From Octopus bimaculoides (Eukaryota): a stretch of DNA of 36,634 nt. Made by a program: the position numbers and the translations under genes. This document shows, one piece after another, positions 2,205 through 35,792 of this stretch (position 1 is the stretch's first letter; each line of letters opens with the position of its first letter). The stretch lies in contig NC_068987.1 of the NCBI RefSeq assembly GCF_001194135.2, positions 14,722,780-14,759,413 on the forward strand. The letters run 5' to 3'. The notes below the pieces were generated by a model, which did no database searches, was not told the DNA's origin, and saw nothing but the letters and a program-made list of their open reading frames with translations.

Positions 2205-2394
2205 GGCTATCGCTGGTTTCATGTTGAGAAAAGTAGGGAAATATCCTAGTGTCTTAACAATTTTTCAAGCCGATCACATGGAAAAATCGGTCTCCAAAAT
2301 GGGAACAAACAACTTTCGCCATGCGATCAGTTTGAAAATTGTTAAGACATTAGGATATTTTCCTACTTTTCTTAACATGAAACCAATGGTAGCT
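2205..2394. mobile_element. MITE with ~77-bp terminal inverted repeats, flanked by TTAA
   Basis: Arms 2205-2281 and 2319-2394 align with 10 substitutions and 1 indel; TTAA at 2201-2204 and 2395-2398. Confidence 0.8.
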
Positions 2395-2508
2395 TTAATT
2401 CACAAATAAAGAATACACGCACACACACATATATATATATACATATATAAATATATATAAATACATACATACATATATAAATATACATATATAAATATAT
2501 ATAAATAC

Positions 2509-2929: not shown

Positions 2930-3139
2930 TTACTGTATTGAAAGTGTTTTGCGTAGAATGTGTGCAGTACCCAGTAGTGCAATTTTCTGTATGTTATATA
3001 TATTTGTAAGTCCTGGTGTTTTTGTTATGTATTTGTCTGAATATTTTTTTATTATACCTAAGGCACCTACTATGATAGGAATTGTTTCTGTTTTTAGATT
3101 CCACATTCGAGTTATCTCTATTTCCAGGTCTTTGTATTT
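2930..3139 (-). pseudogene. C-terminal restriction-like endonuclease remnant of the R4/Dong ORF
   Basis: Open frame KYKDLEIEI...LLGTAHILRKTLSIQ ending at the stop at 2930. Confidence 0.8.
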
Positions 3140-3666
3140 NNNNNNNNNNNNNNNNNNNNNNNNNNNNNNNNNNNNNNNNNNNNNNNNNNNNNNNNNNNNN
3201 NNNNNNNNNNNNNNNNNNNNNNNNNNNNNNNNNNNNNNNNNNNNNNNNNNNNNNNNNNNNNNNNNNNNNNNNNNNNNNNNNNNNNNNNNNNNNNNNNNNN
3301 NNNNNNNNNNNNNNNNNNNNNNNNNNNNNNNNNNNNNNNNNNNNNNNNNNNNNNNNNNNNNNNNNNNNNNNNNNNNNNNNNNNNNNNNNNNNNNNNNNNN
3401 NNNNNNNNNNNNNNNNNNNNNNNNNNNNNNNNNNNNNNNNNNNNNNNNNNNNNNNNNNNNNNNNNNNNNNNNNNNNNNNNNNNNNNNNNNNNNNNNNNNN
3501 NNNNNNNNNNNNNNNNNNNNNNNNNNNNNNNNNNNNNNNNNNNNNNNNNNNNNNNNNNNNNNNNNNNNNNNNNNNNNNNNNNNNNNNNNNNNNNNNNNNN
3601 NNNNNNNNNNNNNNNNNNNNNNNNNNNNNNNNNNNNNNNNNNNNNNNNNNNNNNNNNNNNNNNNNN

Positions 3667-4020: not shown

Positions 4021-5515
4021 CGAACCAATACAGCCTAGTACTTGCGTGGCGCTACTAGGGCAAACAGGAGGTTTTACAAAATTATTTATGAGTCCTGATA
4101 TATTCTTGTTCGTTTTTGTTGTCGATGATGATATTCTTGCTGCTGTCGCTGTCGTTAGAGACGTGTCCCTCAAAGCATATGTTGATGATGATGATGATAA
4201 TGATGATGATGATGATAACGGCGATGGTGGTGACGAAGACGATGTTTTTAATGAAATGACTATTTCCATAGAAGATAACAACAACAACAAAAGTGGCAAA
4301 AAAAAAATAATAAAATAAATAAATGAAATGAAAATGGAATATCTAAAATTTTTGAAACAATTTTCTAAGAACATGCATTACAAGATACAACTAAAAAGAA
4401 TAAAAAAAGGAAAGAAAAGAAGATAGTATAAAAGAACGATGGAATATAATGAAATTCAATCGTGCCAAATAGAATGGAATGAAAGAGAATAGAAAAGAAA
4501 AGAATGGAATTATTAAAATATTTAGTTCTGCACATGTTTTCTTGCAAATGGCTTCCGTTAGTATTTTTATATTTTTTTGATGTGTCAATTTGAAAACGAG
4601 TTTATTAGATAAATGGATTTGAGATCTTACATAAACATCAATACGACGTTACGAAGACGCGCCAAGACATACTACATTTATTGATATATACACATATCTT
4701 ATGTGTGTGTTTATTTCCCACTCTCCCTCTCTCTCGCTCTGTTTCTGGCTGTCTCTCTTTCTCTATATATACATGCATGTNNNNNNNNNNNNNNNNNNNN
4801 NNNNNNNNNNNNNNNNNNNNNNNNNNNNNNNNNNNNNNNNNNNNNNNNNNNNNNNNNNNNNNNNNNNNNNNNNNNNNNNNNNNNNNNNNNNNNNNNNNNN
4901 NNNNNNNNNNNNNNNNNNNNNNNNNNNNNNNNNNNNNNNNNNNNNNNNNNNNNNNNNNNNNNNNNNNNNNNNNNNNNNNNNNNNNNNNNNNNNNNNNNNN
5001 NNNNNNNNNNNNNNNNNNNNNNNNNNNNNNNNNNNNNNNNNNNNNNNNNNNNNNNNNNNNNNNNNNNNNNNNNNNNNNNNNNNNNNNNNNNNNNNNNNNN
5101 NNNNNNNNNNNNNNNNNNNNNNNNNNNNNNNNNNNNNNNNNNNNNNNNNNNNNNNNNNNNNNNNNNNNNNNNNNNNNNNNNNNNNNNNNNNNNNNNNNNN
5201 NNNNNNNNNNNNNNNNNNNNNNNNNNNNNNNNNNNNNNNNNNNNNNNNNNNNNNNNNNNNNNNNNNNNNNNNNNNNNNNNNNNNNNNNNNNNNNNNNNNN
5301 NNNNNNNNNNNNNNNNNNNNNNNNNNNNNNNNNNNNNNNNNNNNNNNNNNNNNNNNNNNNNNNNNNNNNNNNNNNNNNNNNNNNNNNNNNNNNNNNNNNN
5401 NNNNNNNNNNNNNNNNNNNNNNNNNNNNNNNNNNNNNNNNNNNNNNNNNNNNNNNNNNNNNNNNNNNNNNNNNNNNNNNNNNNNNNNNNNNNNNNNNNNN
5501 NNNNNNNNNNNNATA

Positions 5516-5686: not shown

Positions 5687-6818
5687 ATATGTAACAAAAA
5701 ACCCCTCCAAAACAAGCAAAACAATGTATGTATTATTATTATACATGCATACATTCATATGCGTGTGTGTGCATATATATATATATATANNNNNNNNNNN
5801 NNNNNNNNNNNNNNNNNNNNNNNNNNNNNNNNNNNNNNNNNNNNNNNNNNNNNNNNNNNNNNNNNNNNNNNNNNNNNNNNNNNNNNNNNNNNNNNNNNNN
5901 NNNNNNNNNNNNNNNNNNNNNNNNNNNNNNNNNNNNNNNNNNNNNNNNNNNNNNNNNNNNNNNNNNNNNNNNNNNNNNNNNNNNNNNNNNNNNNNNNNNN
6001 NNNNNNNNNNNNNNNNNNNNNNNNNNNNNNNNNNNNNNNNNNNNNNNNNNNNNNNNNNNNNNNNNNNNNNNNNNNNNNNNNNNNNNNNNNNNNNNNNNNN
6101 NNNNNNNNNNNNNNNNNNNNNNNNNNNNNNNNNNNNNNNNNNNNNNNNNNNNNNNNNNNNNNNNNNNNNNTATATATATATATTTATATACATACAAATG
6201 CATCTGTGTGCGTATGTATATATACATAGATATATATATATATGTATGTGTGTGTGTGTGTGTGTGATTATACGAACATGAGCGTGTCTATATGTGTGAG
6301 AGTATATTTGAACTCATATCGCGTATTTATGTTACATACATGTGTTGGCGTTTGTGTTTAGGTGCAATAGTCTTGATTAAAGTGTTAGTATGCAGCATGT
6401 GTTCACGTCCGTATCACTAAATGCATCTCAAATTTCTAGACAAAATACACTTGCGCATATTAAACTATAGATTGTGCTAATAGCAGCCATAAATCTCTCA
6501 GGAATGAAATGAAACCAAGTAGTCATTCTAATCTATTAAAAAGAAACGACAAAATGTATTTTACGAGTCCATGAATTTAATGCTGAAATATGAGTCACGG
6601 CTCTCTCTTATGTAGTCACACTCTTCTGGCCTCTGTATCACTTCGCATCCCTATCCTTCTCCCCTTCTTTTTCTAACAATTTCTCTTTCTCACGTTTTCC
6701 CTCCCCCTCTTTTTCTCTTTTTTTCTATTTCCGTCACTCTCGCCGTAGTTCTGTATGCCGTCGTTACGATTTCAGTCCAAGCCGGCCAGCTCAACTAGAC
6801 CTAAGATAGATCTAAGAA

Positions 6819-10360: not shown

Positions 10361-11862
10361 NNNNNNNNNNNNNNNNNNNNNNNNNNNNNNNNNNNNNNNN
10401 NNNNNNNNNNNNNNNNNNNNNNNNNNNNNNNNNNNNNNNNNNNNNNNNNNNNNNNNNNNNNNNNNNNNNNNNNNNNNNNNNNNNNNNNNNNNNNNNNNNN
10501 NNNNNNNNNNNNNNNNNNNNNNNNNNNNNNNNNNNNNNNNNNNNNNNNNNNNNNNNNNNNNNNNNNNNNNNNNNNNNNNNNNNNNNNNNNNNNNNNNNNN
10601 NNNNNNNNNNNNNNNNNNNNNNNNNNNNNNNNNNNNNNNNNNNNNNNNNNNNNNNNNNNNNNNNNNNNNNNNNNNNNNNNNNNNNNNNNNNNNNNNNNNN
10701 NNNNNNNNNNNNNNNNNNNNNNNNNNNNNNNNNNNNNNNNNNNNNNNNNNNNNNNNNNNNNNNNNNNNNNNNNNNNNNNNNNNNNNNNNNNNNNNNNNNN
10801 NNNNNNNNNNNNNNNNNNNNNNNNNNNNNNNNNNNNNNNNNNNNNNNNNNNNNNNNNNNNNNNNNNNNNNNNNNNNNNNNNNNNNNNNNNNNNNNNNNNN
10901 NNNNNNNNNNNNNNNNNNNNNNNNNNNNNNNNNNNNNNNNNNNNNNNNNNNNNNNNNNNNNNNNNNNNNNNNNNNNNNNNNNNNNNNNNNNNNNNNNNNN
11001 NNNNNNNNNNNNNNNNNNNNNNNNNNNNNNNNNNNNNNNNNNNNNNNNNNNNNNNNNNNNNNNNNNNNNNNNNNNNNNNNNNNNNNNNNNNNNNNNNNNN
11101 NNNNNNNNNNNNNNNNNNNNNNNNNNNNNNNNNNNNNNNNNNNNNNNNNNNNNNNNNNNNNNNNNNNNNNNNNNNNNNNNNNNNNNNNNNNNNNNNNNNN
11201 NNNNNNNNNNNNNNNNNNNNNNNNNNNNNNNNNNAATGCGGTGCCCTGGTATGGACAGCACATATACTGAAACGAGTAGAGAGTATATATAAGTAGCTAT
11301 CCATGTATCATACTTAATGCAGATACATCATGAAACGCGAATTAACTACGATATTTCTGTGGCTATTGAATCTCTTATGGGCGTACAGTGTTTAAAAACA
11401 CGAAACTACATAAGTAACAGACGAAAATCGTCCGAGAGCGGCGGTGAAAATACTACATGCACCTTCTTTTCTCGTTGGGTTTGGTCAGTAGCATATACCC
11501 ACTACCAGCTACTTGCAAAAAAAAAAAAAAAAATACCGCTATTGGTATAGGAAAACAGTGACTGAAAAACAACTGATGCTCCGTTTAGCCGCCCAGCTGA
11601 ATGAAAATTTATAATATGCAACAGAAACGGTATTAGATTTAGCATACTCATCGCCGTTGCTGAATGATTTTCGTTAGCTACTGATATAGTTTTGTGTTTC
11701 TAAACACAGCAAGTTCATAAGGAATATTATCCCTGGGCAAATATCGCAATTAATTTGCTTTTCGTGATGTATCTGCATTACGTATAATACACACATGGCT
11801 ATATTAATCTAATATTGCTTCTATTGCATGCAACGTATATATACATAAACACACATGCATGC

Positions 11863-11920
<58 letters not shown>

Positions 11921-13488
11921 ACACACACAAAAAGATATGTATAAATGTGTGTGCCTGTGTGTGTCTGTATGTGTCTGTATGTCTTTGCGTGTATATGTAT
12001 TCATGTGTGTTTATACATAGATGTACACATATGCTTGTGTGTATGTATTATGTATGTGTATATATATGCATATAATACATGTATGCATACATTATATACA
12101 TGCATATATATATATATATATATATATATANNNNNNNNNNNNNNNNNNNNNNNNACACGCACATGCACACACACATATTACTTCCATACGGATAAGTGTA
12201 TGTTTGCACCAAACAATAAACACATAAACATGTTTATCAGATACCTATAAACTTGTGTGCGCATTAATACATCAAAACACAATTGCAAAACCCGAACACT
12301 CACATACTTCCTCCTCTTTATAGATTCTCGCCCATTTAGCCACAATAACTCACATACTCACACATATCTGTATACGCGCCCCCACACATTAACATTCGCA
12401 TATCCTTCCACGAATAGCAATTCACAGAAGATTAAATCAAATTCACAGAACATAAAAGTAATTAATTATACTGACAATCAGTATTTGAAACTATACACAT
12501 ATTCGTCCCACTATTCTTGTCTCTTCTCTCTATCCGACTGACCAACTGCGTTTATTCCGATGACCGAACAATTGTGAGCCTTTCACCTACCTACACATAC
12601 CCTCTCCTTCTCTTGCACCTAGGCAATTACTTACAAATATTTGCCCTGACATTGTTGCTCACCCCCTAGAATAACTTAATCAGTTGTATATATATNNNNN
12701 NNNNNNNNNNNNNNNNNNNNNNNNNNNNNNNNNNNNNNNNNNNNNNNNNNNNNNNNNNNNNNNNNNNNNNNNNNNNNNNNNNNNNNNNNNNNNNNNNNNN
12801 NNNNNNNNNNNNNNNNNNNNNNNNNNNNNNNNNNNNNNNNNNNNNNNNNNNNNNNNNNNNNNNNNNNNNNNNNNNNNNNNNNNNNNNNNNNNNNNNNNNN
12901 NNNNNNNNNNNNNNNNNNNNNNNNNNNNNNNNNNNNNNNNNNNNNNNNNNNNNNNNNNNNNNNNNNNNNNNNNNNNNNNNNNNNNNNNNNNNNNNNNNNN
13001 NNNNNNNNNNNNNNNNNNNNNNNNNNNNNNNNNNNNNNNNNNNNNNNNNNNNNNNNNNNNNNNNNNNNNNNNNNNNNNNNNNNNNNNNNNNNNNNNNNNN
13101 NNNNNNNNNNNNNNNNNNNNNNNNNNNNNNNNNNNNNNNNNNNNNNNNNNNNNNNNNNNNNNNNNNNNNNNNNNNNNNNNNNNNNNNNNNNNNNNNNNNN
13201 NNNNNNNNNNNNNNNNNNNNNNNNNNNNNNNNNNNNNNNNNNNNNNNNNNNNNNNNNNNNNNNNNNNNNNNNNNNNNNNNNNNNNNNNNNNNNNNNNNNN
13301 NNNNNNNNNNNNNNNNNNNNNNNNNNNNNNNNNNNNNNNNNNNNNNNNNNNNNNNNNNNNNNNNNNNNNNNNNNNNNNNNNNNNNNNNNNNNNNNNNNNN
13401 NNNNNNNNNNNNNNNNNNNNNNNNNNNNNNNNNNNNNNNNNNNNNNNNNNATATATATATATATATATATATACCAGCATGCATACGT

Positions 13489-13567
13489 GGCAGTTTAGCT
13501 TAATGGTTTAGAGCAGCGCGATGCGTAATCACCGAGGTGTGAGTTCGAGTCTCTTTGCCGACCGCCA
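13489..13567 (+). pseudogene. Degenerate tRNA-like sequence (tRNA pseudogene or solo SINE head)
   Basis: A box TAGCTTAATGG, D-stem GCTT/GAGC, T-loop GAG-TTCGAGT-CTC, imperfect acceptor GGCAGTT/GACCGCC. The anticodon arm is distorted and there are extra bases before the acceptor 3' strand. Confidence 0.5.
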
Positions 13568-13828
13568 ACACTATTTTCTGCAAAATAGGAGTAGCTTATA
13601 TTAGGCTATATTATTAGCATTATCCTGCGTTTGAGAATTTAAAAATCACTTCTTTAACTTTCTAAGACATCTCAACGCTTCTAAAGCAAACTTCATTTGT
13701 TTGTTTACGCTCATCGTAATTTGAATTTAACGTATATATATGTATATCGTCAGTTTGTTGCCTCATTTATTTTCGATGCGACAACTTTCTGTTAATACAT
13801 TTGATTTTATGACAACCTCTGTCTAAAC

Positions 13829-14150
13829 CTTAGGTTCTCAAAGTGGATGCTACTGCTCCCTGGTGGGCGTTGAGACGGTGCAGGGGGGCGCTGGTGCCTA
13901 AGCGGGCGATGTGGGGGGGCATTAGAGAAAAAGGTGTCATTGGGAGGAAGGCAGTGAATTGGGGGACTCTACGAATTTATAATATAATAGTATTGTATAC
14001 AAATTATATAATATATAAAGTATCAAATTATTCATAGTATATATAAATTAGTAAAATATAAAATATTTATACATGAAAATAGGGATGGGGCGCTGAGGGT
14101 ATTATGTGGCCAAGAGGGGGGCGTTGGCCCAAAAAGTTTGAGAACCTCTG
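13829..14150. mobile_element. hAT-like (Charlie-type) MITE
   Basis: TIRs cttaggttctcaaa and tttgagaacctctg; gtctaaac repeated at both ends (8-bp NTCTARAN-like target). Confidence 0.65.
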
Positions 14151-14631
14151 TCTAAACGTTTACACATTACCCACAACACATCATTAGCGCTTAATAAAGA
14201 GACTCTCAAATTCAAACATAATACAGTACAGCAAAGCAATTCTTATCATTAATTTCATGGTTGGTAATTTTCTTTGAAGAAATTCAATTGTCTAGACATT
14301 GGTCGGGTCAAGCCAAGGATGGGAGCATGCGCTGCTGCAGCGTGTCGTCGCATCCACCGTTTGTCGATGATTCTCTACTCCTTGTGGATCACGCCTCTGT
14401 AGCACTCATGCGACAACCCTCCCAACTATGGGTCTGTTTCGGTAATCAGTGCTGAGGAAGGTTGGGTCCATTCTTTCTTATGCCGGTCCTCACACTGACA
14501 TAGACGAATATCTTTAAAGAATATCATAGCTTGAAAAATAGCCAGTGGGACATTTTGAACTTTATAGCTTTATATATTGAACTATCTAGCGTTATATATT
14601 GAAACACCACAGACAGAAAAACAGACAGACA

Positions 14632-14632
<1 letters not shown>

Positions 14633-14711
<79 letters not shown>
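14633..14711. repeat. (CA)n microsatellite
   Basis: Direct reading. Confidence 0.95.
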
Positions 14712-14715
<4 letters not shown>

Positions 14716-15607
14716 CGCACATATACACGCACGCACACATGTATATACTCGTGTAAAGTCATATTCAGCATACCTGTATGCATTCAGACATGAGAAAACC
14801 CTTCGCTGCTGAAATAGTGCTGGGTAGATTATCTCCTCTTAGACATAAATTTAGGACTTATTATAAATTCTTTTAAATCTTGCCAAGGAGGTGTACAAAA
14901 GTACCGTTTATGCACAGGTAAGGCCCACGAAATCCTTATGACGGATAATCATATAATCATTAGTTATTAAATAAGCGAATTATTTATCTTAAATGAATTA
15001 GTTATCTTTTTTGTTTCTTTACTAATCATAAATCTTGCAGAATTAGTTATCAACTACATACACAGAATGATGTGGCTATTTTGTAGTTAGATTATAAATG
15101 ATTAATTATTACTAATTAATCAATAACGGATTAAAATATATGCTGGATACGGCAACATTCAATTAGGCGAATCATGGACGCATGGGGGAAGTATATGGAT
15201 TTTATAATTTCTTGTCTTTCCGTTTATTCTCTTCTCATTCTAATTGCCAGGTTTATGAGAAGAATGATTTGCACTGAAGGATGGAACATCTAAATAGAAC
15301 TATAACTTATATGCTTTTACATGTATTAACTCAGGCAATTACTAAACTATTATTACGGTAATAATGGTATCTGTCGCTTCTCTAAGTGTTATTATATATT
15401 ATTATTCTTTCTGGGTTTTACTTGTCATTATTATTATGTCTCTCTTATTGACGAATAAATTACCATCTACCAAATAATGTATTTCATTTTGTACTTAATG
15501 TTATTATTATCGTTGCGTCCATATGAAATATAACTATGAATCTCGTTATAACAGCTTGAATAGCTGCTTTTCTGTATCAATTAACTTGTTATTCTCTTTT
15601 TGTGTTA

Positions 15608-15820
15608 AGTATGGCAGAACGGATAATGTGGAGAAACACTCTGCTTTGTGCTATTTCCCATGGCTCTTCACATTCTGAGTTCAAGTCTCACCGAGGTCAA
15701 TTTTGTGTTTCATCCCCCTTTCGATCGGGGATCATTACAATAAGCTCAAGTACTGGGTCGATGGTGTTAACTAATACTCATCTTCTAAATATTCCTCACT
15801 TTGTATCTAAATAAGAAATA
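15608..15820 (+). mobile_element. Degenerate SINE family A copy
   Basis: tggcagaacggataat...ttctgagttcaagtctcaccgaggtcaattttgtgtttcatcc...gtactgggtcgatg. Confidence 0.55.
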
Positions 15821-15879
15821 ATAATGAATTCAAATTTTGGCTCAAAGCCAGCGAATTCCGGAAGGCGCTAAGTCGAATA

Positions 15880-16156
15880 CGATGTCTGATCAATAATTAT
15901 CCGGACTGTTGCAATAGTAACGAAGCTAAAGTACGCTGAGTAAAGTCGCTTGGCACAGATTAACCTTGAACGCTGCTGTGCAGACGCACTAAATTTTAAC
16001 GTTCTAGCTCACTTCCACTGCATACAACAGTGCTTGGAAGGAAGGTGTGTAGCGTGTGATCGTCACATTGACCATGAAAGAGAAAGTTGAGCAGAGAACC
16101 TGCATCAAATTTTGCCAAAAGCTTGGTGATACCTACTCAGAGGCCTATGCAAAGTT
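15880..16156 (+). mobile_element. Mariner left end with transposase N-terminus
   Basis: TA + cgatgtctgatcaataattatccggact (mariner-type TIR); ATG at 16074 gives MKEKVEQRTCIKFCQKLGDTYSEAYAK (HTH start). Confidence 0.8.
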
Positions 16157-16587
16157 TTCAAAAAGTGTTCATAGTTCTCGACACAATCAAAGGAGGTCTT
16201 GTGTATTTGAAACCCGTGTGTCATTTTGGTCAGCTGAAAGCAGTTTTAGCACCAACTAAGCAGACGTGCGTCTCATACCGAAATCTTCAGTGACAATGGA
16301 CTGAACTGAACCATAACTAATCTTCACATCCTCTGATAACTTACGGATGGCGATTCGACGATTTCCCCTCACAGCTGCACGCACACCTGTGATGGTTTTC
16401 GCAGTTCTGCTGTTTGCAGGTATCCCAGAACGTTCGTCAATATCGACACGTCTGGCTCACTCGTACAATTGTGTGCGGCTCATACACACCTCTCCATACA
16501 CTTTCTTCAACTTGGCATAGGTCTCTGAGCAGGTATCGTCATGATAACTTTCTCTGTCATGGTCAATATGACGATCACACGTTACAC
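16150..16587 (-). mobile_element. Mariner transposase N-terminal fragment in the opposite orientation
   Basis: ATG at 16560; MTEKV..DTCSETYAKLKKVYGEVCMSRTQLYE..RS(G)..VRAAVRGNRRIAIRKLSEDVKISYGSVQSIVTEDFGMRR..KLLSADQ..DCVENYEHFLKTL, with stops and indels. Confidence 0.8.
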
Positions 16588-16626
16588 AAAATTTCGGGCC
16601 TTGTGCCTAGAGTAGAAAAGAATATT
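16587..16626 (+). mobile_element. Solo 3' tail of SINE family A
   Basis: caaaatttcgggccttgtgcctagagtagaaaagaatatt matches 16816-16855. Confidence 0.7.
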
Positions 16627-16636
16627 CTATCATTTA

Positions 16637-16855
16637 AAGGCGGCGAGCTGGCAGAATCGTTAGCACACCGAGCGAAATGCTTAGCGATATTTCATGTCGT
16701 TACATTCTGAGTTCAAATTCCGCCCAGGTCAACTTTGCCTTTCATCCTTTCGGGGGTCAATAAATTAAGTACCAGTTGTGTACTGAGATCAATGAAATCG
16801 ACTGGCCCCCTTCCCCAATATATCGGGCTTTGCGCCTAGAGTAGAAAAAATTATT
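16637..16855 (+). mobile_element. Near full-length tRNA-derived SINE, family A
   Basis: A-box-like tggcagaatcgttag, B-box-like gagttcaaattcc, central gtcaactttgcctttcatcctttcggggg...aagtaccag module; homologues at 15608, 23742, 23877 and 29973. Confidence 0.8.
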
Positions 16856-16890
16856 TCTTTTATGTAATGGTGTGTATAAATACTCCTTCA

Positions 16891-17407
16891 TCTTTAAATT
16901 GTTTCAGGCGTTGAACTGCGAAGTTAAAGAGTTTAATGCAACAAATCAACTCCAGTACTGATTTTTTGAGATTTTGAGCCTTGTATTTATTCTATAACTT
17001 AGCGTTATAAAACTATTAAGTTAGGAGGACGTAAACAAACCAACATCGGTTGTTTAGTGGTGGTAGATGGTGAAGTGCAGGCACACACACACACACACAC
17101 ACACACGCGCGCATTCTCTCACATACACACAAACACAATATTGAATATATTTACAGATGTGCTTTGCCAGTTCGCGGGCAGGCTGCATTTTTAGGTGTAA
17201 GGGAACATATTTATATCAATTCGCCTGGTGTTATACATATACACAACGGCTTCTTTCAGTTTCCGTCTACCATATTCACTCACAAGGCTTCGGTTTGCCC
17301 GTGGTTATAGTAGAAGACACTCGACAAAGGTGCTAAGCAGTCCTGTCTAAACCAGGAGCCATGTAGTGGGGAAACAATCTTCTTACCACACAGCCACGCC
17401 TTCGCCT
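16891..17407 (-). mobile_element. Composite full-length SINE family B (head 17245-17407, internal microsatellite, 3' half 16891-17065)
   Basis: Both halves lie in the same orientation around a (CA)n tract; ~100 bp of unassigned sequence at 17140-17235. Confidence 0.65.
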
Positions 17408-18864
17408 ATAATGTTCATATACTGTGTGGATCTATTCGCATGCGCAATGCTTTGTCGATGACACTCTTAGTACGTGGTGGATTGTATTCTCTCACTATGT
17501 ATGTAAGCTAAGAGAAAAGCTGGTAAGCCTCATTGTACGTGGCTCTGTGCACAAATATAGATGGACGATAATGAGGGTTTGTATTTTTGTCAATGCATAA
17601 ATGGTGCTATGGTGTCTTTTCACTTGGTCACCTGTTTACATTTATATCTGGTATTATATAATGATTCGGATGCCTTGGTGCATGGGAGAGGGGTTTTATT
17701 TAAGGTCTATGTTGTGGTGGATGTGTAAAAGAGAATCTGTATAGAAGTTTAGCCAGTGATTGTGACTGTATACATTCTCGTGCATATGTCCGTGCTTTGA
17801 TATTAATCTCTGATTATAGTATGTGTATATGTTTGTGTATGTCTATGTATGTTTGGTGGGGACAGAGACATTTTAAACTTATATGAAAATATCACAGGGC
17901 ATTTCAAACGTTATAGTGAGATCTATGGGGGCTCTAATTACTTCAATAACTCCGCGGTACGAGCGATTCACTATTTTCTTTATCACTAATTCTAATCGAA
18001 TTTACACGTTAAGTTATTCTGAAGATTCCTGAAAAGGATGAAATAGCACTATCCACAATTATTGCCTACGAGAAATTGTAATAAATTTGCCATAGATAAG
18101 GAAATTATACATGTGAACACTCTGTATCCTCTTCGCATGCCTTGATTTCAAATTCAAAATTCTAATCCTGCTTCATGCTGCGTGGAGATAGTTATTTCCC
18201 TTTGTATTAACGTATATAATAATGTTCCCAGCATTGTTCTATCTATAATATGATACTTCTACACAATGGTATCTTGTCCTGTCAGAAAGTTTCTTTATTT
18301 AACTACATTTTGATTCGAATTCTTCATTTATTATTTTCTTATTGTGATTCCTTTATAATTATTTTTATTTATTCTTTATCGTTGGTTTGGAATGACAATG
18401 CGAGTAAAAGATAACGCGAACAATATTCCCTTTCTTTGGAAATTTTGTTTTCCTTATCTTCTAATTTTTTCTTTTATCTTTGTTTATACTTTATCTATGT
18501 ATTTGTATTTACGTATTTCTTTAATCTTCTGATTTTATCGCTATTGTCTTCCGTGACTTTTGATTGAGCATGATTCTCTAGTGTCCAAGGTCGATATGAA
18601 AAGAGCAAAAAATTAATCACTAAACAAATTTATATTCGTTGATGACAATCTCGAAGAAGAATAAGAACGATGAGGCAAAACTTCTCTATTTATTGCTATA
18701 ATATTTTCCTGATTCATTGGACAATACGTAGTTTTGCATTATTGTGTAAAAGCAACATCCATTTACAATTAATCTACGATGGGCGCTTTTTCTCCGAATT
18801 TTTTTCTTGTGCAATGTTTCCAGTTAACGACAGTTTTTGTTTCCATTAACTGTTTCGTTTTCAG

Positions 18865-18923
18865 TTACCTCCTCATGATTAAGCAACGCCCTTCATTTCC
18901 CATCAAGCATAACTTTTTCGAAG
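18865..18923 (+). CDS. Candidate 59-bp exon (YLLMIKQRPSFPIKHNFFE), product unknown
   Basis: tgtttcgttttcag acceptor and GAAG|GTAAAC donor; one open frame. Overlaps the perfect hairpin. Confidence 0.25.
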
Positions 18924-18975
18924 GTAAACACCTTCGAAAAAGTTATGCTTGATGGGAAATGAAGGGCGTTGCTTA
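18880..18975. repeat. Perfect 46-bp inverted repeat with a 4-nt loop (AAAC)
   Basis: 18880-18925 is the exact reverse complement of 18930-18975. Confidence 0.97.
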
Positions 18976-19346
18976 CCTTGACTGCAAACCATTGGTAGCT
19001 TTCGTAGGATGTGATTGTAGAGAACCTATCTTCCCTTACTTAATGAAATAGCTGTTGAGACCAAACGAGGTATAAACTACATGTGGAACAAAGACTTTTC
19101 TGATTCTATGCTAAATGTGTTACTTCATTAGATCGTTTTAGCTGATTATGTAAATACATGCAAGCGATCCCACGTGCATTTATGTAATGCAATAATGTGT
19201 CGCAGCTTAACAACATTTTATTATTGTGGATTCATTTTTTCATGTTTATACATCAATTCTCTCTCTTTTTGACATCTTTCCTTCTTTCATTCCTTTCTTT
19301 CTTAATATATGTATGTGTATGATGTAACGAATAGATNNNNNNNNNN

Positions 19347-19684: not shown

Positions 19685-19837
19685 TTCTTCTTCTTCTTCT
19701 TCTTCTTCTTCTTCTTCTTCTTCTTCTTCTTCTTCTTCTTCTTCTTCTTCTTCTTCTTCTTCTTCTTCTTCTTCTTCTTCTTCTTCTTCTTCTTCTTCTT
19801 CTTCTTCTTCTTCTTCTTCTTCTTCTTCTTCTTCTTC
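19685..19837. repeat. (TTC)51 pure microsatellite
   Basis: Direct reading; followed by a short (TTA)n. Confidence 0.95.
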
Positions 19838-20004
19838 TCATTATTATTATTATTACTATATTTATCCTACGTTCTATCGGCACAACTCGGTAAGATCCCA
19901 TAAAACTGCTCTCGCAAGTTGGAATCACTAAGCCATAGCCGACATAACATAGATTTTATATGCTCACTCAAGACGTTTCCCGTAAACGAACTTAAAGGAT
20001 ACAC

Positions 20005-20541: not shown

Positions 20542-21080
20542 GTAGGTGTTTGATTTCGTTTCCTCCATTTAAATTCAAGCATTTCTAATTTTATTCTCGT
20601 TGTTGTTATTCAACCAAGACTTAACTATTTTCTTTATTCTTCAAGTCTTTCTCCGTTTCGCATAGAATAAGATGGAAGGAATATACCCTTTGTAGTTCAG
20701 GCCACAACTGGAAGCTGTAATGTAAACGAGCTACGTCTTCCATATTGCATCACTGCACATATAATATTTTTCATAATTAAATATGCACACCGTATCTCAC
20801 TTGCCTTTGTTCTTACGTAGCATAAAAAAACAACTTAATATACTACAGTAAATCCCATTTAAAACTGAAAATAGATATCTTTTAAGACCGCTTCTCTTGT
20901 TATTTTTTCCCTAAAACAATGCTATCTTTGGTGTTCTAAATATTCTGTCTTTCAAACGTTCGTATTCTAAATTTTAGATAATTTAAAGTTCGACTTTCTG
21001 ACATTCTGCCTTATCTTATGATCTAAACTAATAATATATATATATTATAGTGGGGTAGGCCGGTTTATGAGGTCACCATG

Positions 21081-21190
21081 GGTTTCTTGCTCATAAGGGG
21101 TTTAGCCTTACGGCGTATCTTCGGACACCAAACATTGGTTTCTCGCTCATAGGGGGTTTAGCCTTACGGCGTATCTTCGGACACCAAACA
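21081..21190. repeat. Tandem duplication, 56-bp period, 2 copies
   Basis: ggtttc..gctcata..ggggtttagccttacggcgtatcttcggacaccaaaca at 21081 and 21137, with 2 mismatches. Confidence 0.92.
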
Positions 21191-21422
21191 CTGCTGGCCT
21201 GAGACCTCTTTAAAACATGGAGGAGGAAAAGCCTCGTTTTTAAGGGTAAAACACTAGGTGATTATCTCCCTTTGCCATTGTCCATCGATCTTCGGCCGCG
21301 TTGCTATCTTTCGGTCACCAAAGCATCACTAAGATTAATGATTGTCTCCCTTCGGCCTTGGCTATTGGTTTCTGGTTGTGGAACCGCCATGCGGATTTCA
21401 GAAATCCAGTAGGAATTTTCTA

Positions 21423-21561
21423 AGAGATAGACCATAGTATCAAAGCCCCTAGACAAGAAAGTTCTACGGAACCATGAGCCGATGTTAATGTTACTTCAGT
21501 GTGTGCCCATGGTTCCGTAGAACTTTTTCGTATAAGGACTTTGATACTATAATCTCTCTCT
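21423..21561. mobile_element. Unclassified hairpin MITE-like element, 57-bp arms
   Basis: 21423-21479 versus the reverse complement of 21505-21561: 9 mismatches; 25-bp spacer. Confidence 0.7.
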
Positions 21562-21695
21562 TTGCATTACATATGAATTTCTGATTTTGTTTGAAGTTTG
21601 GAGAAGCTCTTTCGGGAGAAAAGAAAATGACTTTTTATGTATGATGATATAATAAAAGTTTTATTCTACCCTTGCATAATATATACAATGCTCAG

Positions 21696-22350: not shown

Positions 22351-23485
22351 NNNNNNNNNNNNNNNNNNNNNNNNNNNNNNNNNNNNNNNNNNNNNNNNNN
22401 NNNNNNNNNNNNNNNNNNNNNNNNNNNNNNNNNNNNNNNNNNNNNNNNNNNNNNNNNNNNNNNNNNNNNNNNNNNNNNNNNNNNNNNNNNNNNNNNNNNN
22501 NNNNNNNNNNNNNNNNNNNNNNNNNNNNNNNNNNNNNNNNNNNNNNNNNNNNNNNNNNNNNNNNNNNNNNNNNNNNNNNNNNNNNNNNNNNNNNNNNNNN
22601 NNNNNNNNNNNNNNNNNNNNNNNNNNNNNNNNNNNNNNNNNNNNNNNNNNNNNNNNNNNNNNNNNNNNNNNNNNNNNNNNNNNNNNNNNNNNNNNNNNNN
22701 NNNNNNNNNNNNNNNNNNNNNNNNNNNNNNNNNNNNNNNNNNNNNNNNNNNNNNNNNNNNNNNNNNNNNNNNNNNNNNNNNNNNNNNNNNNNNNNNNNNN
22801 NNNNNNNNNNNNNNNNNNNNNNNNNNNNNNNNNNNNNNNNNNNNNNNNNNNNNNNNNNNNNNNNNNNNNNNNNNNNNNNNNNNNNNNNNNNNNNNNNNNN
22901 NNNNNNNNNNNNNNNNNNNNNNNNNNNNNNNNNNNNNNNNNNNNNNNNNNNNNNNNNNNNNNNNNNNNNNNNNNNNNNNNNNNNNNNNNNNNNNNNNNNN
23001 NNNNNNNNNNNNNNNNNNNNNNNNNNNNNNNNNNNNNNNNNNNNNNNNNNNNNNNNNNNNNNNNNNNNNNNNNNNNNNNNNNNNNNNNNNNNNNNNNNNN
23101 NNNNNNNNNNNNNNNNNNNNNNNNNNNNNNNNNNNNNNNNNNNNNNNNNNNNNNNNNNNNNNNNNNNNNNNNNNNNNNNNNNNNNNNNNNNNNNNNNNNN
23201 NNNNNNNNNNNNNNNNNNNNNNNNNNNNNNNNNNNNNNNNNNNNNNNNNNNNNNNNNNNNNNNNNNNNNNNNNNNNNNNNNNNNNNNNNNNNNNNNNNNN
23301 NNNNNNNNNNNNNNNNNNNNNNNNNNNNNNNNNNNNNNNNNNTGTATATATATATATACATACATATATGTATATATATGTACATATATGTATATATATG
23401 CATATATATATATACATATATATATGTATATGTATATACATACAAACACACACACGTACACACACACCACACACACACATGCACA

Positions 23486-25310: not shown

Positions 25311-26198
25311 NNNNNNNNNNNNNNNNNNNNNNNNNNNNNNNNNNNNNNNNNNNNNNNNNNNNNNNNNNNNNNNNNNNNNNNNNNNNNNNNNNNNNNNNNN
25401 NNNNNNNNNNNNNNNNNNNNNNNNNNNNNNNNNNNNNNNNNNNNNNNNNNNNNNNNNNNNNNNNNNNNNNNNNNNNNNNNNNNNNNNNNNNNNNNNNNNN
25501 NNNNNNNNNNNNNNNNNNNNNNNNNNNNNNNNNNNNNNNNNNNNNNNNNNNNNNNNNNNNNNNNNNNNNNNNNNNNNNNNNNNNNNNNNNNNNNNNNNNN
25601 NNNNNNNNNNNNNNNNNNNNNNNNNNNNNNNNNNNNNNNNNNNNNNNNNNNNNNNNNNNNNNNNNNNNNNNNNNNNNNNNNNNNNNNNNNNNNNNNNNNN
25701 NNNNNNNNNNNNNNNNNNNNNNNNNNNNNNNNNNNNNNNNNNNNNNNNNNNNNNNNNNNNNNNNNNNNNNNNNNNNNNNNNNNNNNNNNNNNNNNNNNNN
25801 NNNNNNNNNNNNNNNNNNNNNNNNNNNNNNNNNNNNNNNNNNNNNNNNNNNNNNNNNNNNNNNNNNNNNNNNNNNNNNNNNNNNNNNNNNNNNNNNNNNN
25901 NNNNNNNNNNNNNNNNNNNNNNNNNNNNNNNNNNNNNNNNNNNNNNNNNNNNNNNNNNNNNNNNNNNNNNNNNNNNNNNNNNNNNNNNNNNNNNNNNNNN
26001 NNNNNNNNNNNNNNNNNNNNNNNNNNNNNNNNNNNNNNNNNNNNNNATATATATATATATATACATATATATTTACATTATATATAATGCATGCATATAT
26101 GTAAACACATTCACATATGTATATATCAGTATACATAGATATAAATACATACATTAACTTCTTTTGTGGCGGCTGTTCCTACCTCAGTATTGCCGTCG

Positions 26199-27448: not shown

Positions 27449-28334
27449 TGAGGTGTAGTCAAAAAGTATCCGAACTTTGGTAAAAAAAAAACAAGTAATA
27501 TGAAATAAACTCATCATTTTGATTTAGTCACCTTCAAAGTATCTGCCTTGGGAGTCTACATACTTTTGCCAGCATTCCTGCCGCTGTTGGAAATCACTTT
27601 TTGGGATGCTGTAGAGCTGTGCCGTCGAATTTTGCTTAATGTCCTCTGTTGACTCAAATCTTCTCTCTTTGAGTGGTTTTCTTTTTTTTTTTGAGCTTTG
27701 GGAATAGCCAAAAGTCATACGGAGCCAAGTCTGGGGAATAGGAAGCCTGACGAACAAGTGGTGTGTTTTGCTGGTCGAGGAATGCTTGGACGACGTGAAC
27801 GGAATGAGCTGGTGTTTTGTCATGGTGGAGTTGCGAGTTTTACGCAGTCCACAGGTCCTCAATAGTCACACAACAGTCTTCATAGACTATTCCGCGAACC
27901 TTTGCAATCATTTCGTCGTTTCTGCTAGTCGATGGTCTGCCACAATGTGGCCCACTGTCCACTGAAGTGCAGCTATCTTTGAACCGGTTGTACCACTCCT
28001 TTATTTGAGATTTTCCCATAGCATTATCTCCAAAGGCCTTCTGAATCTTCTCGATAGTCTGGGCTTTCATATCACCAAGTTTTGGGCAGAATCTGATGCA
28101 GTATCTTTACTCAATGTGCTCGGTCATCTTGACTATAAAAAAAAATCACTCAATGCACTCTTCACTTCTGTACTCAACGTGTCACTGCAGGCGACTGGTG
28201 CAACCTACAGACACGAAAATTTTTGCGCATGCTCAGGAAGGATGCAGCAACCTAATGCCCATGCGGATTTTGCTTACGCATTTATTATTTTGTGCAAAAA
28301 ATATCAAGGTCTGATACTTTTTGACTACATCTCG
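27449..28334 (-). mobile_element. Internally deleted mariner (D,D34D) element, 886 bp, with both TIRs and a TA target duplication
   Basis: TA-tgaggtgtagtcaaaaagtatccgaac ... gtctgatactttttgactacatctcg-TA. Transposase relic 28127->27524: MTEHIE*RYCIRFCPKLG..EWYNRFKD..GRPSTSRN..VTIE/DLWTA*NSQLHHDKTPAH..YSPDLAPYDFWLFPKLK..YFEGD*. There are 34 residues between the last two catalytic Asp. Confidence 0.92.
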
Positions 28335-31517: not shown

Positions 31518-31554
31518 TTATTATTATTATTATTATCATTATTATTATTATTAC

Positions 31555-31645
<91 letters not shown>
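31518..31645. repeat. (TTA)n microsatellite, two interruptions
   Basis: Direct reading. Confidence 0.95.
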
Positions 31646-33437: not shown

Positions 33438-35166
33438 GTATGTATGTGTGTGCGTGTGGGTGTATCTAAACACACACACATACATACATACATACATACA
33501 TAGATACATACATACATACATACATACATACACATATATATTATACATAAGTAATGTACTAGAAAGAACAGTTAGCATTATTTAAACTAAGGTTGAATAA
33601 TTTATTTGCATGAAACCGTTGGTATCGTAGTAACATCCCTCCATTACTAAAACTATTAAAAGACACACTAGTGCGTGTGCACATATGAATATATATGTGT
33701 GTGTGAATGTGTCTGAGTGAAAATGTGGGTATGTGTGCTCCCACAAAGAGTCTCTGCACAATTTCTGTCTATGAAATTTCAGTTGCAACGCATGGGTTGT
33801 CTCTTGGCTCCAACAGACGACACCAGAACAAGAGGAAGTGTAGTAGGATGGAAAATGAAAATCATATGATTTCGATATTCATGTTTTAAAAACACAGCTA
33901 CGTGAATGAGTGAGATGAGGGGGAGTGAGGGGGGAGCTTATGATATATTTTCAGTATTGAAAATATTACTATTTTGGGTTATAAAAACATCATTAATATA
34001 CTGATTAATACACTGGTATCGATTGAATCGATTAGTCCTTCAACATCCCTTCGAGAAATGTTGGTCTACTGCCCAGTCAAAACAAATCGCTTATTGCTAA
34101 AATGGTTGAAGTCTAAACTTTTCTGCAGAACAAGTTCACGAAGACTGTGTCACGTGATTAACGAGAAATTTAGGTCAGCTGTAAACATTGCATTAGAAAA
34201 ATCTTATGGATTTTACACTCTGTCTTGCTCAAACAAGCATTTAATGCTGTTGTTTGGTGCTGTATTTGTGCGGGATGTGGGTTTGCGACGGGGGATGGTG
34301 AATCGAGGTTGTTGGATTTATGATTTGCTAGCAGAGAGACTCAATGTTTCTTGGAAATTGACCAGCATTTGGTCTGTGTTAAATAGAGAAACACACACAC
34401 ACACGTTCATACATATACATGTGTATATATGTATCTATGNNNNNNNNNNNNNNNNNNNNNNNNNNNNNNNNNNNNNNNNNNNNNNNNNNNNNNNNNNNNN
34501 NNNNNNNNNNNNNNNNNNNNNNNNNNNNNNNNNNNNNNNNNNNNNNNNNNNNNNNNNNNNNNNNNNNNNNNNNNNNNNNNNNNNNNNNNNNNNNNNNNNN
34601 NNNNNNNNNNNNNNNNNNNNNNNNNNNNNNNNNNNNNNNNNNNNNNNNNNNNNNNNNNNNNNNNNNNNNNNNNNNNNNNNNNNNNNNNNNNNNNNNNNNN
34701 NNNNNNNNNNNNNNNNNNNNNNNNNNNNNNNNNNNNNNNNNNNNNNNNNNNNNNNNNNNNNNNNNNNNNNNNNNNNNNNNNNNNNNNNNNNNNNNNNNNN
34801 NNNNNNNNNNNNNNNNNNNNNNNNNNNNNNNNNNNNNNNNNNNNNNNNNNNNNNNNNNNNNNNNNNNNNNNNNNNNNNNNNNNNNNNNNNNNNNNNNNNN
34901 NNNNNNNNNNNNNNNNNNNNNNNNNNNNNNNNNNNNNNNNNNNNNNNNNNNNNNNNNNNNNNNNNNNNNNNNNNNNNNNNNNNNNNNNNNNNNNNNNNNN
35001 NNNNNNNNNNNNNNNNNNNNNNNNNNNNNNNNNNNNNNNNNNNNNNNNNNNNNNNNNNNNNNNNNNNNNNNNNNNCGACATTAGCATTCATATAACAATG
35101 AGATATAGTATTGCATAGCTAGCTGGAACACAAACCACCGGCTTGTTTACTGTAGCTTTAAGCAAT

Positions 35167-35436
35167 GCACTCCATCCTTTACAACGACGAGGTTTCCAGT
35201 TGATCCGATCAACGGAACATTCTGCTCGTGAAATTAACGTGCAAGTGGCTGAGCACTCCACAGACACGTGTACCCTTAACGTAGTTCTCGGGGGGATTCA
35301 GCGTGACACAGAGTGTGACAAGGCTAGTCCTTTGAAATACAGGCACAACAGAAACAGGAAGAAAGAGTGAGAGAAAGTTGTGGTGAAGGAGTACAGCAGG
35401 ATTCGCCACCATCCCCTGCCGGAGCCTCGTGGAGCT
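35167..35436 (-). mobile_element. 5'-truncated SINE family C copy
   Basis: Reverse complement of the body of 36329-36634. Confidence 0.85.
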
Positions 35437-35727: not shown

Positions 35728-35792
35728 ACTGTTATAGTTTCTTCAANNNNNNNNNNATCTGTGCATGCATACATACATACATATCTATATAT

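What the first reader, a model, noticed from the sequence alone, without database searches (positions are those of the whole stretch)
18865..18980. Perfect 46-bp hairpin overlapping a candidate exon and its splice donor
Seen: 46/46 identity with a 4-nt loop, whereas the other complex inverted repeats here are visibly diverged (about 5-16% where counted). There are no TIR/TSD hallmarks and no other copy in the window. The left arm covers most of a 59-bp AG..GT-bounded open segment, with the donor GT at the stem tip; the outer edge of the right arm is also a strong minus-strand donor (AAG|GTAAGC). Known: ADAR editing, extensive in coleoid cephalopods, needs exon-intron dsRNA, and stems over 5' splice sites can cause exon skipping. 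Inference: an editing-complementary or splice-masking structure or hairpin-RNA precursor. A very recent template-switch inversion or a library/assembly fold-back artefact is equally possible.
Basis: partly seen in the sequence, partly recalled or inferred. Interest (0 to 1): 0.7.

Follow-up and report, generated by a model that had tools for sequence, protein, structure and literature searches.

The report
Young snap-back hairpin in octopus DNA
The perfect 46-bp hairpin is real in the sequence. It is most likely the fresh scar of one DNA-copying slip, in which the new strand folded back on a 5-bp repeat and copied itself, in non-coding octopus DNA, where such structures are common; it is probably not an exon, an editing site or a microRNA gene.

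Summary
Arms 18880-18925 and 18930-18975 are 46/46 complementary around the loop AAAC. This is the only complex perfect hairpin in the window, and there is no second copy.

Removing 45 nt (18935-18979) leaves ...TCGAAGGT-AAAC-ACCTT-GA..., a small quasi-palindrome.

This is the signature of a snap-back or template-switch insertion. A 3' end ...ACCTT paired with AAGGT, copied about 40 nt of its own strand, then returned to the template. A repeat of this kind arises by chance about 0.3% of the time.

Both "splice donors" are copies of this AAGGT microhomology.

The 59-bp "exon" is not special. Ten AG..GT open segments on the + strand are equally good, and no protein homologue was found for it or for 84 ORFs across the window.

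The window is a gap-rich draft octopod scaffold. Published data show that octopus genomes are unusually rich in near-perfect local inverted repeats, and this window sits at that background level.

Function is not shown, and an assembly artefact is not excluded. Interest is low to moderate.

The parts
18880..18925 (+). Left arm of the hairpin (46 nt). Inferred to be the pre-existing sequence that served as template.
   Evidence: 46/46 complementarity. Its role as template is inferred from the direct repeat that flanks only the other arm. A composition test of which arm is native was uninformative.
18926..18929 (+). Loop AAAC, not self-complementary.
   Evidence: A non-palindromic loop rules out an origin by opening of a covalently closed hairpin end. 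It also means that reads spanning the junction must exist.
18930..18975 (+). Right arm (46 nt). Inferred copy, apart from its first 5 nt, ACCTT, which are inferred to be ancestral.
18921..18925 (+). AAGGT, the inner 5 bp of the left arm. Inferred distal primer repeat on which the 3' end folded back. It is also the core of the plus-strand 'donor' AAG|GTAAAC.
   Evidence: reverse complement of 18930-34. (donor score 6.7 bits; 39 equal or better donors on the + strand).
18930..18934 (+). ACCTT, first copy of the direct repeat. Inferred 3' end of the nascent strand at the moment of snap-back.
18975..18979 (+). ACCTT, second copy of the direct repeat, made of the last base of the right arm plus CCTT of the flank. 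Inferred point of return to the original template. Its complement is the core of the minus-strand 'donor' AAG|GTAAGC.
   Evidence: chance of a repeat of this kind, in either orientation, is 0.33% by Monte Carlo. (11.1 bits; among the top 3 on the minus strand).
18935..18979 (+). Inferred 45-nt templated insertion (equivalently 18930-18974). Deleting it gives the predicted ancestral allele ...TTTTTCGAAGGTAAACACCTT|GACTGCAAACC...
   Evidence: The ancestral sequence keeps a weak 5-bp hairpin, -3.7 kcal/mol as DNA. With TC/GA and one bulged G it forms a 7-bp quasi-palindrome.
18865..18923 (+). Not supported as an exon.
   Evidence: 10 equally good segments on the + strand. (no homologue, no family).

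Best explanation
The hairpin is a real and very young mutation. It is a single-event inverted templated insertion, of the kind called a snap-back or template-switch mutation.

Inferred sequence of events:
1. The ancestral sequence read ...TCGAAGGT-AAAC-ACCTT-GACTGC..., a small quasi-palindrome.
2. During replication or break repair, a 3' end finishing in ...ACCTT folded back onto AAGGT, four bases upstream.
3. That end was extended by 40-41 nt, using its own strand (the left arm) as template.
4. It then returned to the original template at A/CCTT.

The net result is a 45-nt insertion flanked by the direct repeat ACCTT. This turned a 5-bp stem into a perfect 46-bp stem.

What is shown and what is inferred:
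- Shown: the exact inverted copy, the 5-nt primer repeat next to the loop, and the 5-nt direct repeat around one arm only.
- Inferred: the ancestral allele, the direction of copying, and whether a replicative polymerase or a repair polymerase (Pol theta type) did the copying.

The locus lies in non-coding, repeat-rich octopod DNA, and there is no evidence of function. If it is transcribed, it would be one more promiscuous dsRNA substrate for ADAR or Dicer, like many others in octopus genomes.
For: - The arms are 46/46 complementary, with a 4-nt loop that does not pair with itself.
- ACCTT occurs at 18930-34 and again at 18975-79. AAGGT at 18921-25 is its complement. Deleting 45 nt restores a plausible quasi-palindromic precursor. 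A repeat of this kind occurred in 0.33% of simulated contexts, counting either orientation, and the mirror model shows none.
- This anatomy matches the published template-switch model, in which one event creates perfect pairing for a whole hairpin (PMC10710096; PMC5453318).
- It also matches the snap-back SD-MMEJ model: inverted primer repeats P1/P2, with the nascent insertion becoming part of a longer inverted repeat (PMC5728401).
- The arm sequence is unique in the window and in 40 kb of two other octopus assemblies.
- Four unique local palindromes at 100%, about 95%, 87% and 84% arm identity occur in the 72 kb of octopus DNA sampled. This is what continuous birth followed by neutral decay would give.
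- One of those four lies in an independent assembly (GCA_006345805.1), which from my own knowledge is long-read-based.
- Octopus bimaculoides has an exceptionally high fraction of loci (4.4e-3) with a near-perfect reverse partner within 2 kb (PMC5625713). This window gives 3.1e-3.
Against: - No outgroup, second individual or raw reads could be obtained, so the ancestral allele is a reconstruction, not an observation.
- I found the ACCTT repeat after inspecting the junctions, so the 0.33% figure is partly post hoc.
- 40-41 nt is long for the 'limited synthesis' usually described for snap-back repair.
- The precursor hairpin is weak: -3.7 kcal/mol, and 22 of 200 shuffles fold as well.
- A composition test could not show which arm is native.
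- The window is a draft scaffold with 11 N gaps, so assembly quality is limited.
Confidence: 0.6

Rival explanations
1. Assembly or library artefact. The hairpin does not exist in the animal's genome. It was produced by fold-back chimeric molecules or by gap-closing or local assembly in a short-read draft.
For: - The window is a scaffold with 11 N gaps, and a 10-N gap lies 360 nt away at 19337-46.
- 100% arm identity is what an artefact would give.
- No independent sequence of the locus could be found.
Against: - The hairpin lies inside a 5.9-kb gap-free contig.
- The loop is not palindromic, so a graph cannot flip strands there without reads that contain the junction (inference).
- A fold-back molecule predicts the right arm followed by the reverse complement of the left flank (ATCATGAGG...). 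The sequence instead continues as CCTTGACTG..., so two novel junctions are needed.
- The return with a 5-nt duplication is a switch-and-return signature that requires a template to be present.
- A comparable unique palindrome occurs in a different octopus assembly.
Confidence: 0.15
2. A miniature foldback transposon (a MITE of the Tc1/mariner Stowaway type). It would have inserted at a TA, with 44-bp terminal inverted repeats making up nearly the whole element.
For: - The stem starts and ends with TA (TAAGC...GCTTA), which is compatible with a TA target-site duplication.
- A Mos1-type transposase remnant lies in the window at 27843-28106(-), HTH_48 at 36.6 bits, with best hits in Octopus.
- Palindromic DNA repeats explain the abundance of dsRNA in frog (PMC5625713).
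Against: - There is no second copy in the window or in 40 kb of other octopus DNA. This sample is small.
- TA is self-complementary, so it cannot be told apart from two further stem pairs.
- There is no similarity to the mariner copies in the window.
- The element model does not predict the ACCTT direct repeat around one arm only.
Confidence: 0.1
3. A functional RNA hairpin: a newborn miRNA or hairpin-siRNA precursor, an ADAR editing-complementary structure, or a stem that masks a 5' splice site. This could hold whatever its mutational origin.
For: - The RNA structure is very stable on both strands.
- Covariance models of miRNA families that are themselves near-perfect hairpins score it at E of 1e-10 to 1e-13.
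- Template switching is a documented source of new miRNAs (PMC10710096).
- Octopuses gained 90 novel miRNA families and edit intronic hairpins heavily (PMC9699675).
Against: - All Rfam hits fall far below gathering score and, for several families, score equally or nearly equally on both strands, so they reflect structure only (MIR837 63 against 117 bits; mir-3146 58.6 against 96).
- The 46-bp perfect stem with a 4-nt loop does not fit the preferred pri-miRNA shape of about 35 bp with a loop of 10 nt or more.
- The arm is absent from the supplementary files of the octopus miRNA study that are held as text.
- There is no support for an exon.
- In octopus, editing very rarely alters splice sites.
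- There is no evidence of transcription or conservation.
Confidence: 0.07

Closest known systems
Template-switch mutations (TSMs): the four-point model of Loytynoja & Goldman 2017, and TSM-born hairpins and miRNAs of Monttinen et al. 2022/2023
   Same: - One event creates a perfect reverse-complement copy of adjacent sequence and so a complete hairpin.
- It is nucleated at a short pre-existing quasi-palindrome, as in Ripley's classic model.
- The return point lies upstream of the departure point, which gives a short duplication.
- The length of 40-46 nt falls within the 28-83 nt examples quoted.
   Different: In the published work, TSMs are called by comparison with reconstructed ancestral or sister sequences. 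Here the ancestral state is only inferred from internal repeats. The published cases are from primates, rodents and yeast, and I found none described for cephalopods.
Snap-back synthesis-dependent MMEJ / polymerase theta templated insertions (Yu & McVey 2010; Khodaverdian et al. 2017; Kent et al. 2016)
   Same: - Inverted primer repeats (AAGGT/ACCTT) sit next to the insertion.
- The insertion is copied in cis from the same strand.
- The insertion becomes part of a longer inverted repeat.
- There is microhomology at the rejoining point.
   Different: The synthesis described for this pathway is limited and non-processive, whereas this case needs 40-41 nt. A simple break after ACCTT does not by itself explain why ACCTT is present on both sides. 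No break or polymerase dependence can be shown from sequence.
Near-perfect local inverted repeats that make octopus an outlier in dsRNA-forming potential and ADAR hyper-editing (Porath et al. 2017)
   Same: More than 95% identity over 40 nt or more to a reverse-oriented partner within 2 kb. This locus is exactly what that statistic counts, and the window's value (3.1e-3) is near the published genome value (4.4e-3).
   Different: Porath et al. attribute most such structures to pairs of inverted repetitive elements or to palindromic repeats. This one is single-copy in the sample and self-templated.
Palindromic MITEs (e.g. the about 200-bp palindromic Harbinger repeat of Xenopus)
   Same: A short element that folds on itself into a tight hairpin. 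A TA is present at both ends.
   Different: No other copies were found, there is no internal sequence, and the direct repeat brackets one arm rather than the whole unit.

Membership tests
Template-switch mutation (four-point model) | The new segment is an exact reverse complement of nearby sequence. | tested here: met
   46/46 complementarity, with the copy 4 nt from its template.
Template-switch mutation (four-point model) | One switch-and-return event explains the difference from the ancestral or sister sequence. | tested here: inconclusive
   No sister sequence was available. Internal reconstruction (delete 18935-18979) gives a coherent single-event solution, with a 5-nt duplication at the return point.
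Template-switch mutation (four-point model) | The ancestral allele without the inverted copy exists in an outgroup or in other individuals. | not testable with these tools
   Orthologous octopus DNA could not be fetched. The predicted junction is absent from metagenome contigs, which is uninformative.
Snap-back SD-MMEJ / Pol theta templated insertion | Inverted primer repeats (P1/P2) that let the 3' end fold back next to the insertion. | tested here: met
   AAGGT at 18921-25 and ACCTT at 18930-34, separated by 4 nt. Model described in PMC5728401.
Snap-back SD-MMEJ / Pol theta templated insertion | Short, non-processive synthesis followed by microhomology annealing across a break. | tested here: inconclusive
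   40-41 nt were copied, which is longer than the limited, non-processive synthesis the model describes. The microhomology on return is 1 nt (A), or 5 nt if ACCTT is counted.
Canonical animal miRNA precursor | A stem of about 35 bp with an unstructured apical loop of 10 nt or more. | tested here: not met
   46-bp perfect stem and 4-nt loop. Criterion as quoted in PMC10710096.
Canonical animal miRNA precursor | Match to a curated family at or above its threshold. | tested here: not met
   No hits at gathering score. The best sub-threshold hit is 63.1 against 117 bits, and several families score equally or nearly equally on both strands.
Canonical animal miRNA precursor | Small-RNA reads with 5p/3p arms, and presence in a second species. 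| not testable with these tools
   No read data were available. The arm is not in the supplementary files of PMC9699675 that are held as text.
MITE (Tc1/mariner-type, TA target duplication) | Terminal inverted repeats flanked by a TA duplication. | tested here: inconclusive
   TA is present at both stem ends. Because TA is self-complementary, it may simply be two more stem pairs.
MITE (Tc1/mariner-type, TA target duplication) | Multiple dispersed copies. | tested here: not met
   No copy in the 31 kb of non-gap window sequence or in 40 kb of L001/L002. The sample is too small to exclude a low-copy family.
Protein-coding exon | Splice signals and an open frame that stand out from background. 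| tested here: not met
   - Donor 6.7 bits, with 39 as good on the + strand.
- Acceptor pyrimidine fraction 0.72, with 102 as good.
- 10 open AG..GT segments are equally good.
- The scoring matrix is an approximate generic consensus taken from my own knowledge, not trained on octopus.
Protein-coding exon | Encoded peptide has homologues or a family match. | tested here: not met
   No candidate shares words with the peptide. No Pfam hit on either strand. No hit for 84 ORFs totalling 4,915 aa from the window.
ADAR editing-complementary structure | A transcribed exon-containing duplex with A-to-G mismatches in RNA. | not testable with these tools
   The duplex potential is present. Transcription and editing cannot be assessed, and the exon component is unsupported.

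The most novel reading that the evidence does not exclude
Snap-back templated insertions like this one may be a major, so far uncredited, source of the exceptional load of near-perfect local dsRNA-forming sequences in octopus genomes. They would then supply the raw material for octopus ADAR hyper-editing and for its burst of lineage-specific miRNAs. On this reading, this locus is a newborn hairpin caught before any decay.
Probability: 0.1. Interest if true: 0.6.

Novelty: new member of a known kind. Interest (0 to 1): 0.25.

Why it matters
For this locus alone, not much. It is a neutral-looking, single-copy hairpin in non-coding DNA, occurring at about the density already reported for octopus.

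Its value is as an unusually clean specimen. With no later substitutions, the primer repeat, the copied tract and the return-point duplication can all be read directly, and they yield an exact, testable prediction of the ancestral allele.

Suppose a genome-wide census showed that many of the unique perfect hairpins in octopus carry the same signature. That would tie a specific mutational mechanism to two notable cephalopod traits: massive A-to-I hyper-editing of hairpins and rapid gain of miRNAs.

Tried and rejected
**Attempts to find an independent copy of the locus. All failed.**
- Exact look-up of the 57-aa ORF across the hairpin.
- A word-based protein search with that ORF.
- Exact look-up of 10 neighbouring ORFs.
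- The arm 25-mer and the predicted ancestral junction in metagenome contigs.

**Fetching orthologous octopus DNA through annotated genes.**
- The mariner remnant led to O. bimaculoides and O. sinensis loci. These proved to be paralogous transposon copies, not syntenic.

**Searching for any exon in the window.**
- It then ran at 4,915 aa with no hits.

**Other tests.**
- Deciding which arm is native by strand composition with Markov models of order 0-3 gave a log2 likelihood ratio between -1 and +1.3, which is uninformative.
- The same direct-repeat signature was not seen at the older palindromes at window 2186-2413, window 21422-21562 and L002 14476-14652.

**Readings rejected.**
- Origin by off-centre opening of a covalently closed hairpin end (hAT/RAG-type P nucleotides). 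That gives a palindrome through the centre, whereas the loop AAAC is not self-complementary.
- A 6-mer TTACCT at 18865-70 and 18973-78 as a target-site duplication. The unit it would bound has no terminal inverted repeats.
- The mariner-like look of ORFs near 16.0-16.6 kb, which Pfam did not confirm.

Full report
**1. The observation**

The sequence at 18865-18980 is as described. Arms 18880-18925 and 18930-18975 are 46 nt long and 100% complementary, separated by the four bases AAAC.

The fold is far beyond chance:
- As RNA, -94 kcal/mol against -33 +/- 3.8 for dinucleotide shuffles, z = -15.9.
- As DNA, -58 kcal/mol with z about -20 on either strand.

A census of perfect short-loop hairpins shows that every other one of 12 bp or more in the window is a microsatellite. 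The arm has no other copy in the window, at up to 3 mismatches in 25 nt or by blastn with word 7.

The other complex inverted repeats are all diverged, at 93.5%, 93%, about 87%, 84% and 74% identity.

The AG (18863-64), the 59-nt open segment (18865-18923), the GT at the stem tip (18924-25) and the minus-strand AAG|GTAAGC are all present.

**2. Context**

The window is a eukaryotic draft scaffold:
- It has 11 runs of N, from 10 to 992 nt.
- It is 35% G+C and dense in microsatellites.
- The hairpin lies inside a gap-free stretch, 13451-19336, 360 nt from a 10-N gap.

A Mos1-type transposase remnant at 27843-28106(-) matches Pfam HTH_48. Its best relatives are in Octopus bimaculoides (76%) and O. 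sinensis (68%).

The two octopus loci fetched through those proteins (L001, L002) share only transposon and SINE-like repeats with the window and are not syntenic. Rfam finds nothing at curated thresholds.

**3. The exon and the splice sites**

Scoring used a generic donor matrix and the pyrimidine content of the acceptor. The matrix holds approximate consensus values from my own knowledge and is not trained on octopus.

- The plus-strand donor AAG|GTAAAC scores 6.7 bits, and 39 sites on that strand score as well or better.
- 102 acceptors are as pyrimidine-rich.
- 10 AG..GT open segments of 30-300 nt are at least as good on the + strand alone.

The peptide across the hairpin shares no words with any of 5.8 billion proteins and has no Pfam match on either strand. 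A concatenate of 84 non-repetitive ORFs (4,915 aa) from 4.3-33.8 kb also found nothing at E of 0.01 or better.

So there is no protein-level support for an exon here, or for the ORFs of 40 aa or more tested in the 4.3-33.8 kb stretch around it. The minus-strand donor is strong, at 11.1 bits and among the top three on that strand. Section 4 shows that it is a by-product.

**4. What the junctions show**

The right arm begins with ACCTT (18930-34). The last base of the right arm plus the next four bases of flank read ACCTT again (18975-79). AAGGT, the inner five bases of the left arm (18921-25), is the complement of both.

Deleting the 45 nt between the repeats (18935-18979) gives ...TTTTTCGAAGGT-AAAC-ACCTT|GACTGCAAACC.... 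This contains a small quasi-palindrome: TCGAAGGT facing ACCTT-GA, with one bulged G.

That is the substrate and product expected from a snap-back or template switch:
1. A 3' end ...ACCTT pairs with AAGGT four bases upstream.
2. It is extended on its own strand through CGAAAAAG...GCTT(A), 40-41 nt.
3. It then returns to the original template at A/CCTT, so that ACCTT is copied twice.

In 200,000 simulated contexts drawn from the window, a direct repeat of this kind of 5 nt or more arose in 0.33% of cases, counting either orientation. The mirror model, with the left arm as the copy, shows no repeat. I found the repeat after inspecting the junctions, so this figure is somewhat optimistic.

Two consequences follow:
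- The strong minus-strand donor spans the inferred insertion junction, so the event created it.

**5. Why not a simple artefact, a transposon or a hairpin-end footprint**

*Artefact.* A fold-back chimeric molecule would continue, after the right arm, as the reverse complement of the left flank (ATCATGAGG...). The sequence instead continues as CCTTGACTG.... Two novel junctions are therefore needed, together with a return to the template. The loop is not self-complementary, so an assembly graph cannot change strand there without reads that contain the junction (inference). An artefact is not excluded in a gap-rich draft, but it is the less economical reading.

*Miniature transposon.* A TA target duplication is compatible with the TA at both stem ends. 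However, no second copy exists in the 72 kb of octopus DNA available, and that model does not predict a repeat around one arm only.

*Hairpin-end footprint.* Off-centre opening of a covalently closed hairpin end would give a palindrome through the centre, and AAAC is not one.

**6. How ordinary is it in this genome?**

Porath et al. (PMC5625713) measured the fraction of random 50-bp loci with a reverse partner at more than 95% identity over 40 bp or more within 2 kb. They found O. bimaculoides exceptional, at 4.4e-3.

My approximation of the same statistic gives 3.1e-3 for this window, of which 2.2e-3 is this hairpin. One such structure in about 30 kb is therefore roughly what the genome average predicts.

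The 20 kb fetched by chance from O. sinensis holds another unique palindrome:
- A 56-bp perfect stem with a 6-nt loop, at L002 14507-14624.
- It extends to 87-nt arms with a few indels.

The window itself has two older unique palindromes, at 2186-2413 (about 87%) and 21422-21562 (84%). None of the four has another copy in the sample.

A series running from perfect to decayed fits continuous birth followed by neutral decay. With four cases this is only suggestive.

**7. Function**

Nothing supports function. The stem is longer and the loop shorter than the preferred pri-miRNA shape of about 35 bp with a loop of 10 nt or more.

The Rfam hits in E-value mode are to families that are themselves near-perfect hairpins. 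They fall far below gathering score (63 against 117 bits; 58.6 against 96), and several families score equally or nearly equally on both strands.

The arm is not in the supplementary files of the octopus miRNA study that are held as text. That study also reports two relevant points:
- Most octopus editing lies in intronic and 3'UTR hairpins.
- Editing very rarely alters splice sites.

If this locus is transcribed, it would probably be hyper-edited like other long perfect duplexes. That would be a consequence of the structure rather than a purpose.

**8. Verdict**

Probabilities:

| Reading | Probability |
|---|---|
| Real, very young snap-back or template-switch insertion | about 0.6 |
| Assembly or library artefact | about 0.15 |
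| Foldback transposon | about 0.1 |
| Functional RNA hairpin | about 0.07 |

The hairpin is a new example of a known kind of mutation. It is the cleanest one in this window, and it comes with a precise prediction: an allele or orthologue shorter by exactly 18935-18979. Interest is low to moderate.

Noticed in passing
L002:14476-14652 (Octopus sinensis CM016868.1): Another unique near-perfect palindrome, in an unrelated octopus locus that was fetched by chance. It has a 56-bp perfect inner stem (14507-14562 / 14569-14624) and a 6-nt spacer. The arms extend to 87 nt with 3 indels and 2 mismatches in the outer part, and the whole unit is embedded in (TA)n microsatellite. The inner part is perfect and the outer part imperfect.
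   Followed up: partly
window 2186-2413: A self-complementary unit with 96-nt arms (2186-2281 / 2319-2413) at about 87% identity and a 37-nt spacer. It has no other copy in the window, L001 or L002. It could be an older hairpin of the same kind or a low-copy foldback element.
   Followed up: partly
window 21422-21562: A self-complementary unit with 58-nt arms at 84% identity and a 25-nt spacer. It is single-copy in the sample and lies just downstream of a 56-bp tandem duplication at 21077-21190.
   Followed up: partly
window 27527-28106 (-): An internally deleted, frame-shifted Mos1/mariner transposase remnant. The HTH_48 domain is confirmed by Pfam. The best relatives are 'GVQW3-like' proteins of Octopus bimaculoides (76%) and O. 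sinensis (68%).
   Followed up: yes
window 35236-35436 and 36436-36634: A 201-nt inverted repeat pair at 93.5% identity, 999 nt apart and running to the window end. The unit matches a repeat in the O. sinensis locus (L002 5813-6129) at 91%, so it is a dispersed SINE-like element. If transcribed, the pair could form dsRNA.
   Followed up: partly
window 11304-11458 and 11637-11791: An inverted repeat pair at 74% identity, belonging to a dispersed element. There are further fragments at 21.8-22.3 kb in the window and at L002 8272-8701.
   Followed up: partly
window 3140-3666, 4781-5512, 5790-6170, 10361-11234, 12131-12154, 12696-13450, 19337-19346, 22351-23342, 25311-26046, 34440-35075, 35747-35756: Eleven runs of N totalling 5,677 nt, 15% of the window. 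Most are bordered by microsatellites. The very long 'inverted repeats' reported by the repeat finder at these places are N against N and are not real.
   Followed up: yes
window 19685-19838 and 31518-31645: Long microsatellites: a perfect (TTC)51 and a near-perfect (96% matches) (TTA)43. The first lies 700 nt downstream of the hairpin. Perfection over 150 nt suggests that they are young or actively expanding.
   Followed up: no
window 2930-3139 (-): An ORF ending ...ALLGTAHILRKTLSIQ next to a gap. By eye it resembles the C-terminal tail found in some invertebrate retroelement ORFs. Pfam gave no match.
   Followed up: partly
window 18865-18870 and 18973-18978: The 6-mer TTACCT occurs 15 nt upstream of the left arm and again across the end of the right arm. 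It overlaps the ACCTT repeat and is probably chance.
   Followed up: partly
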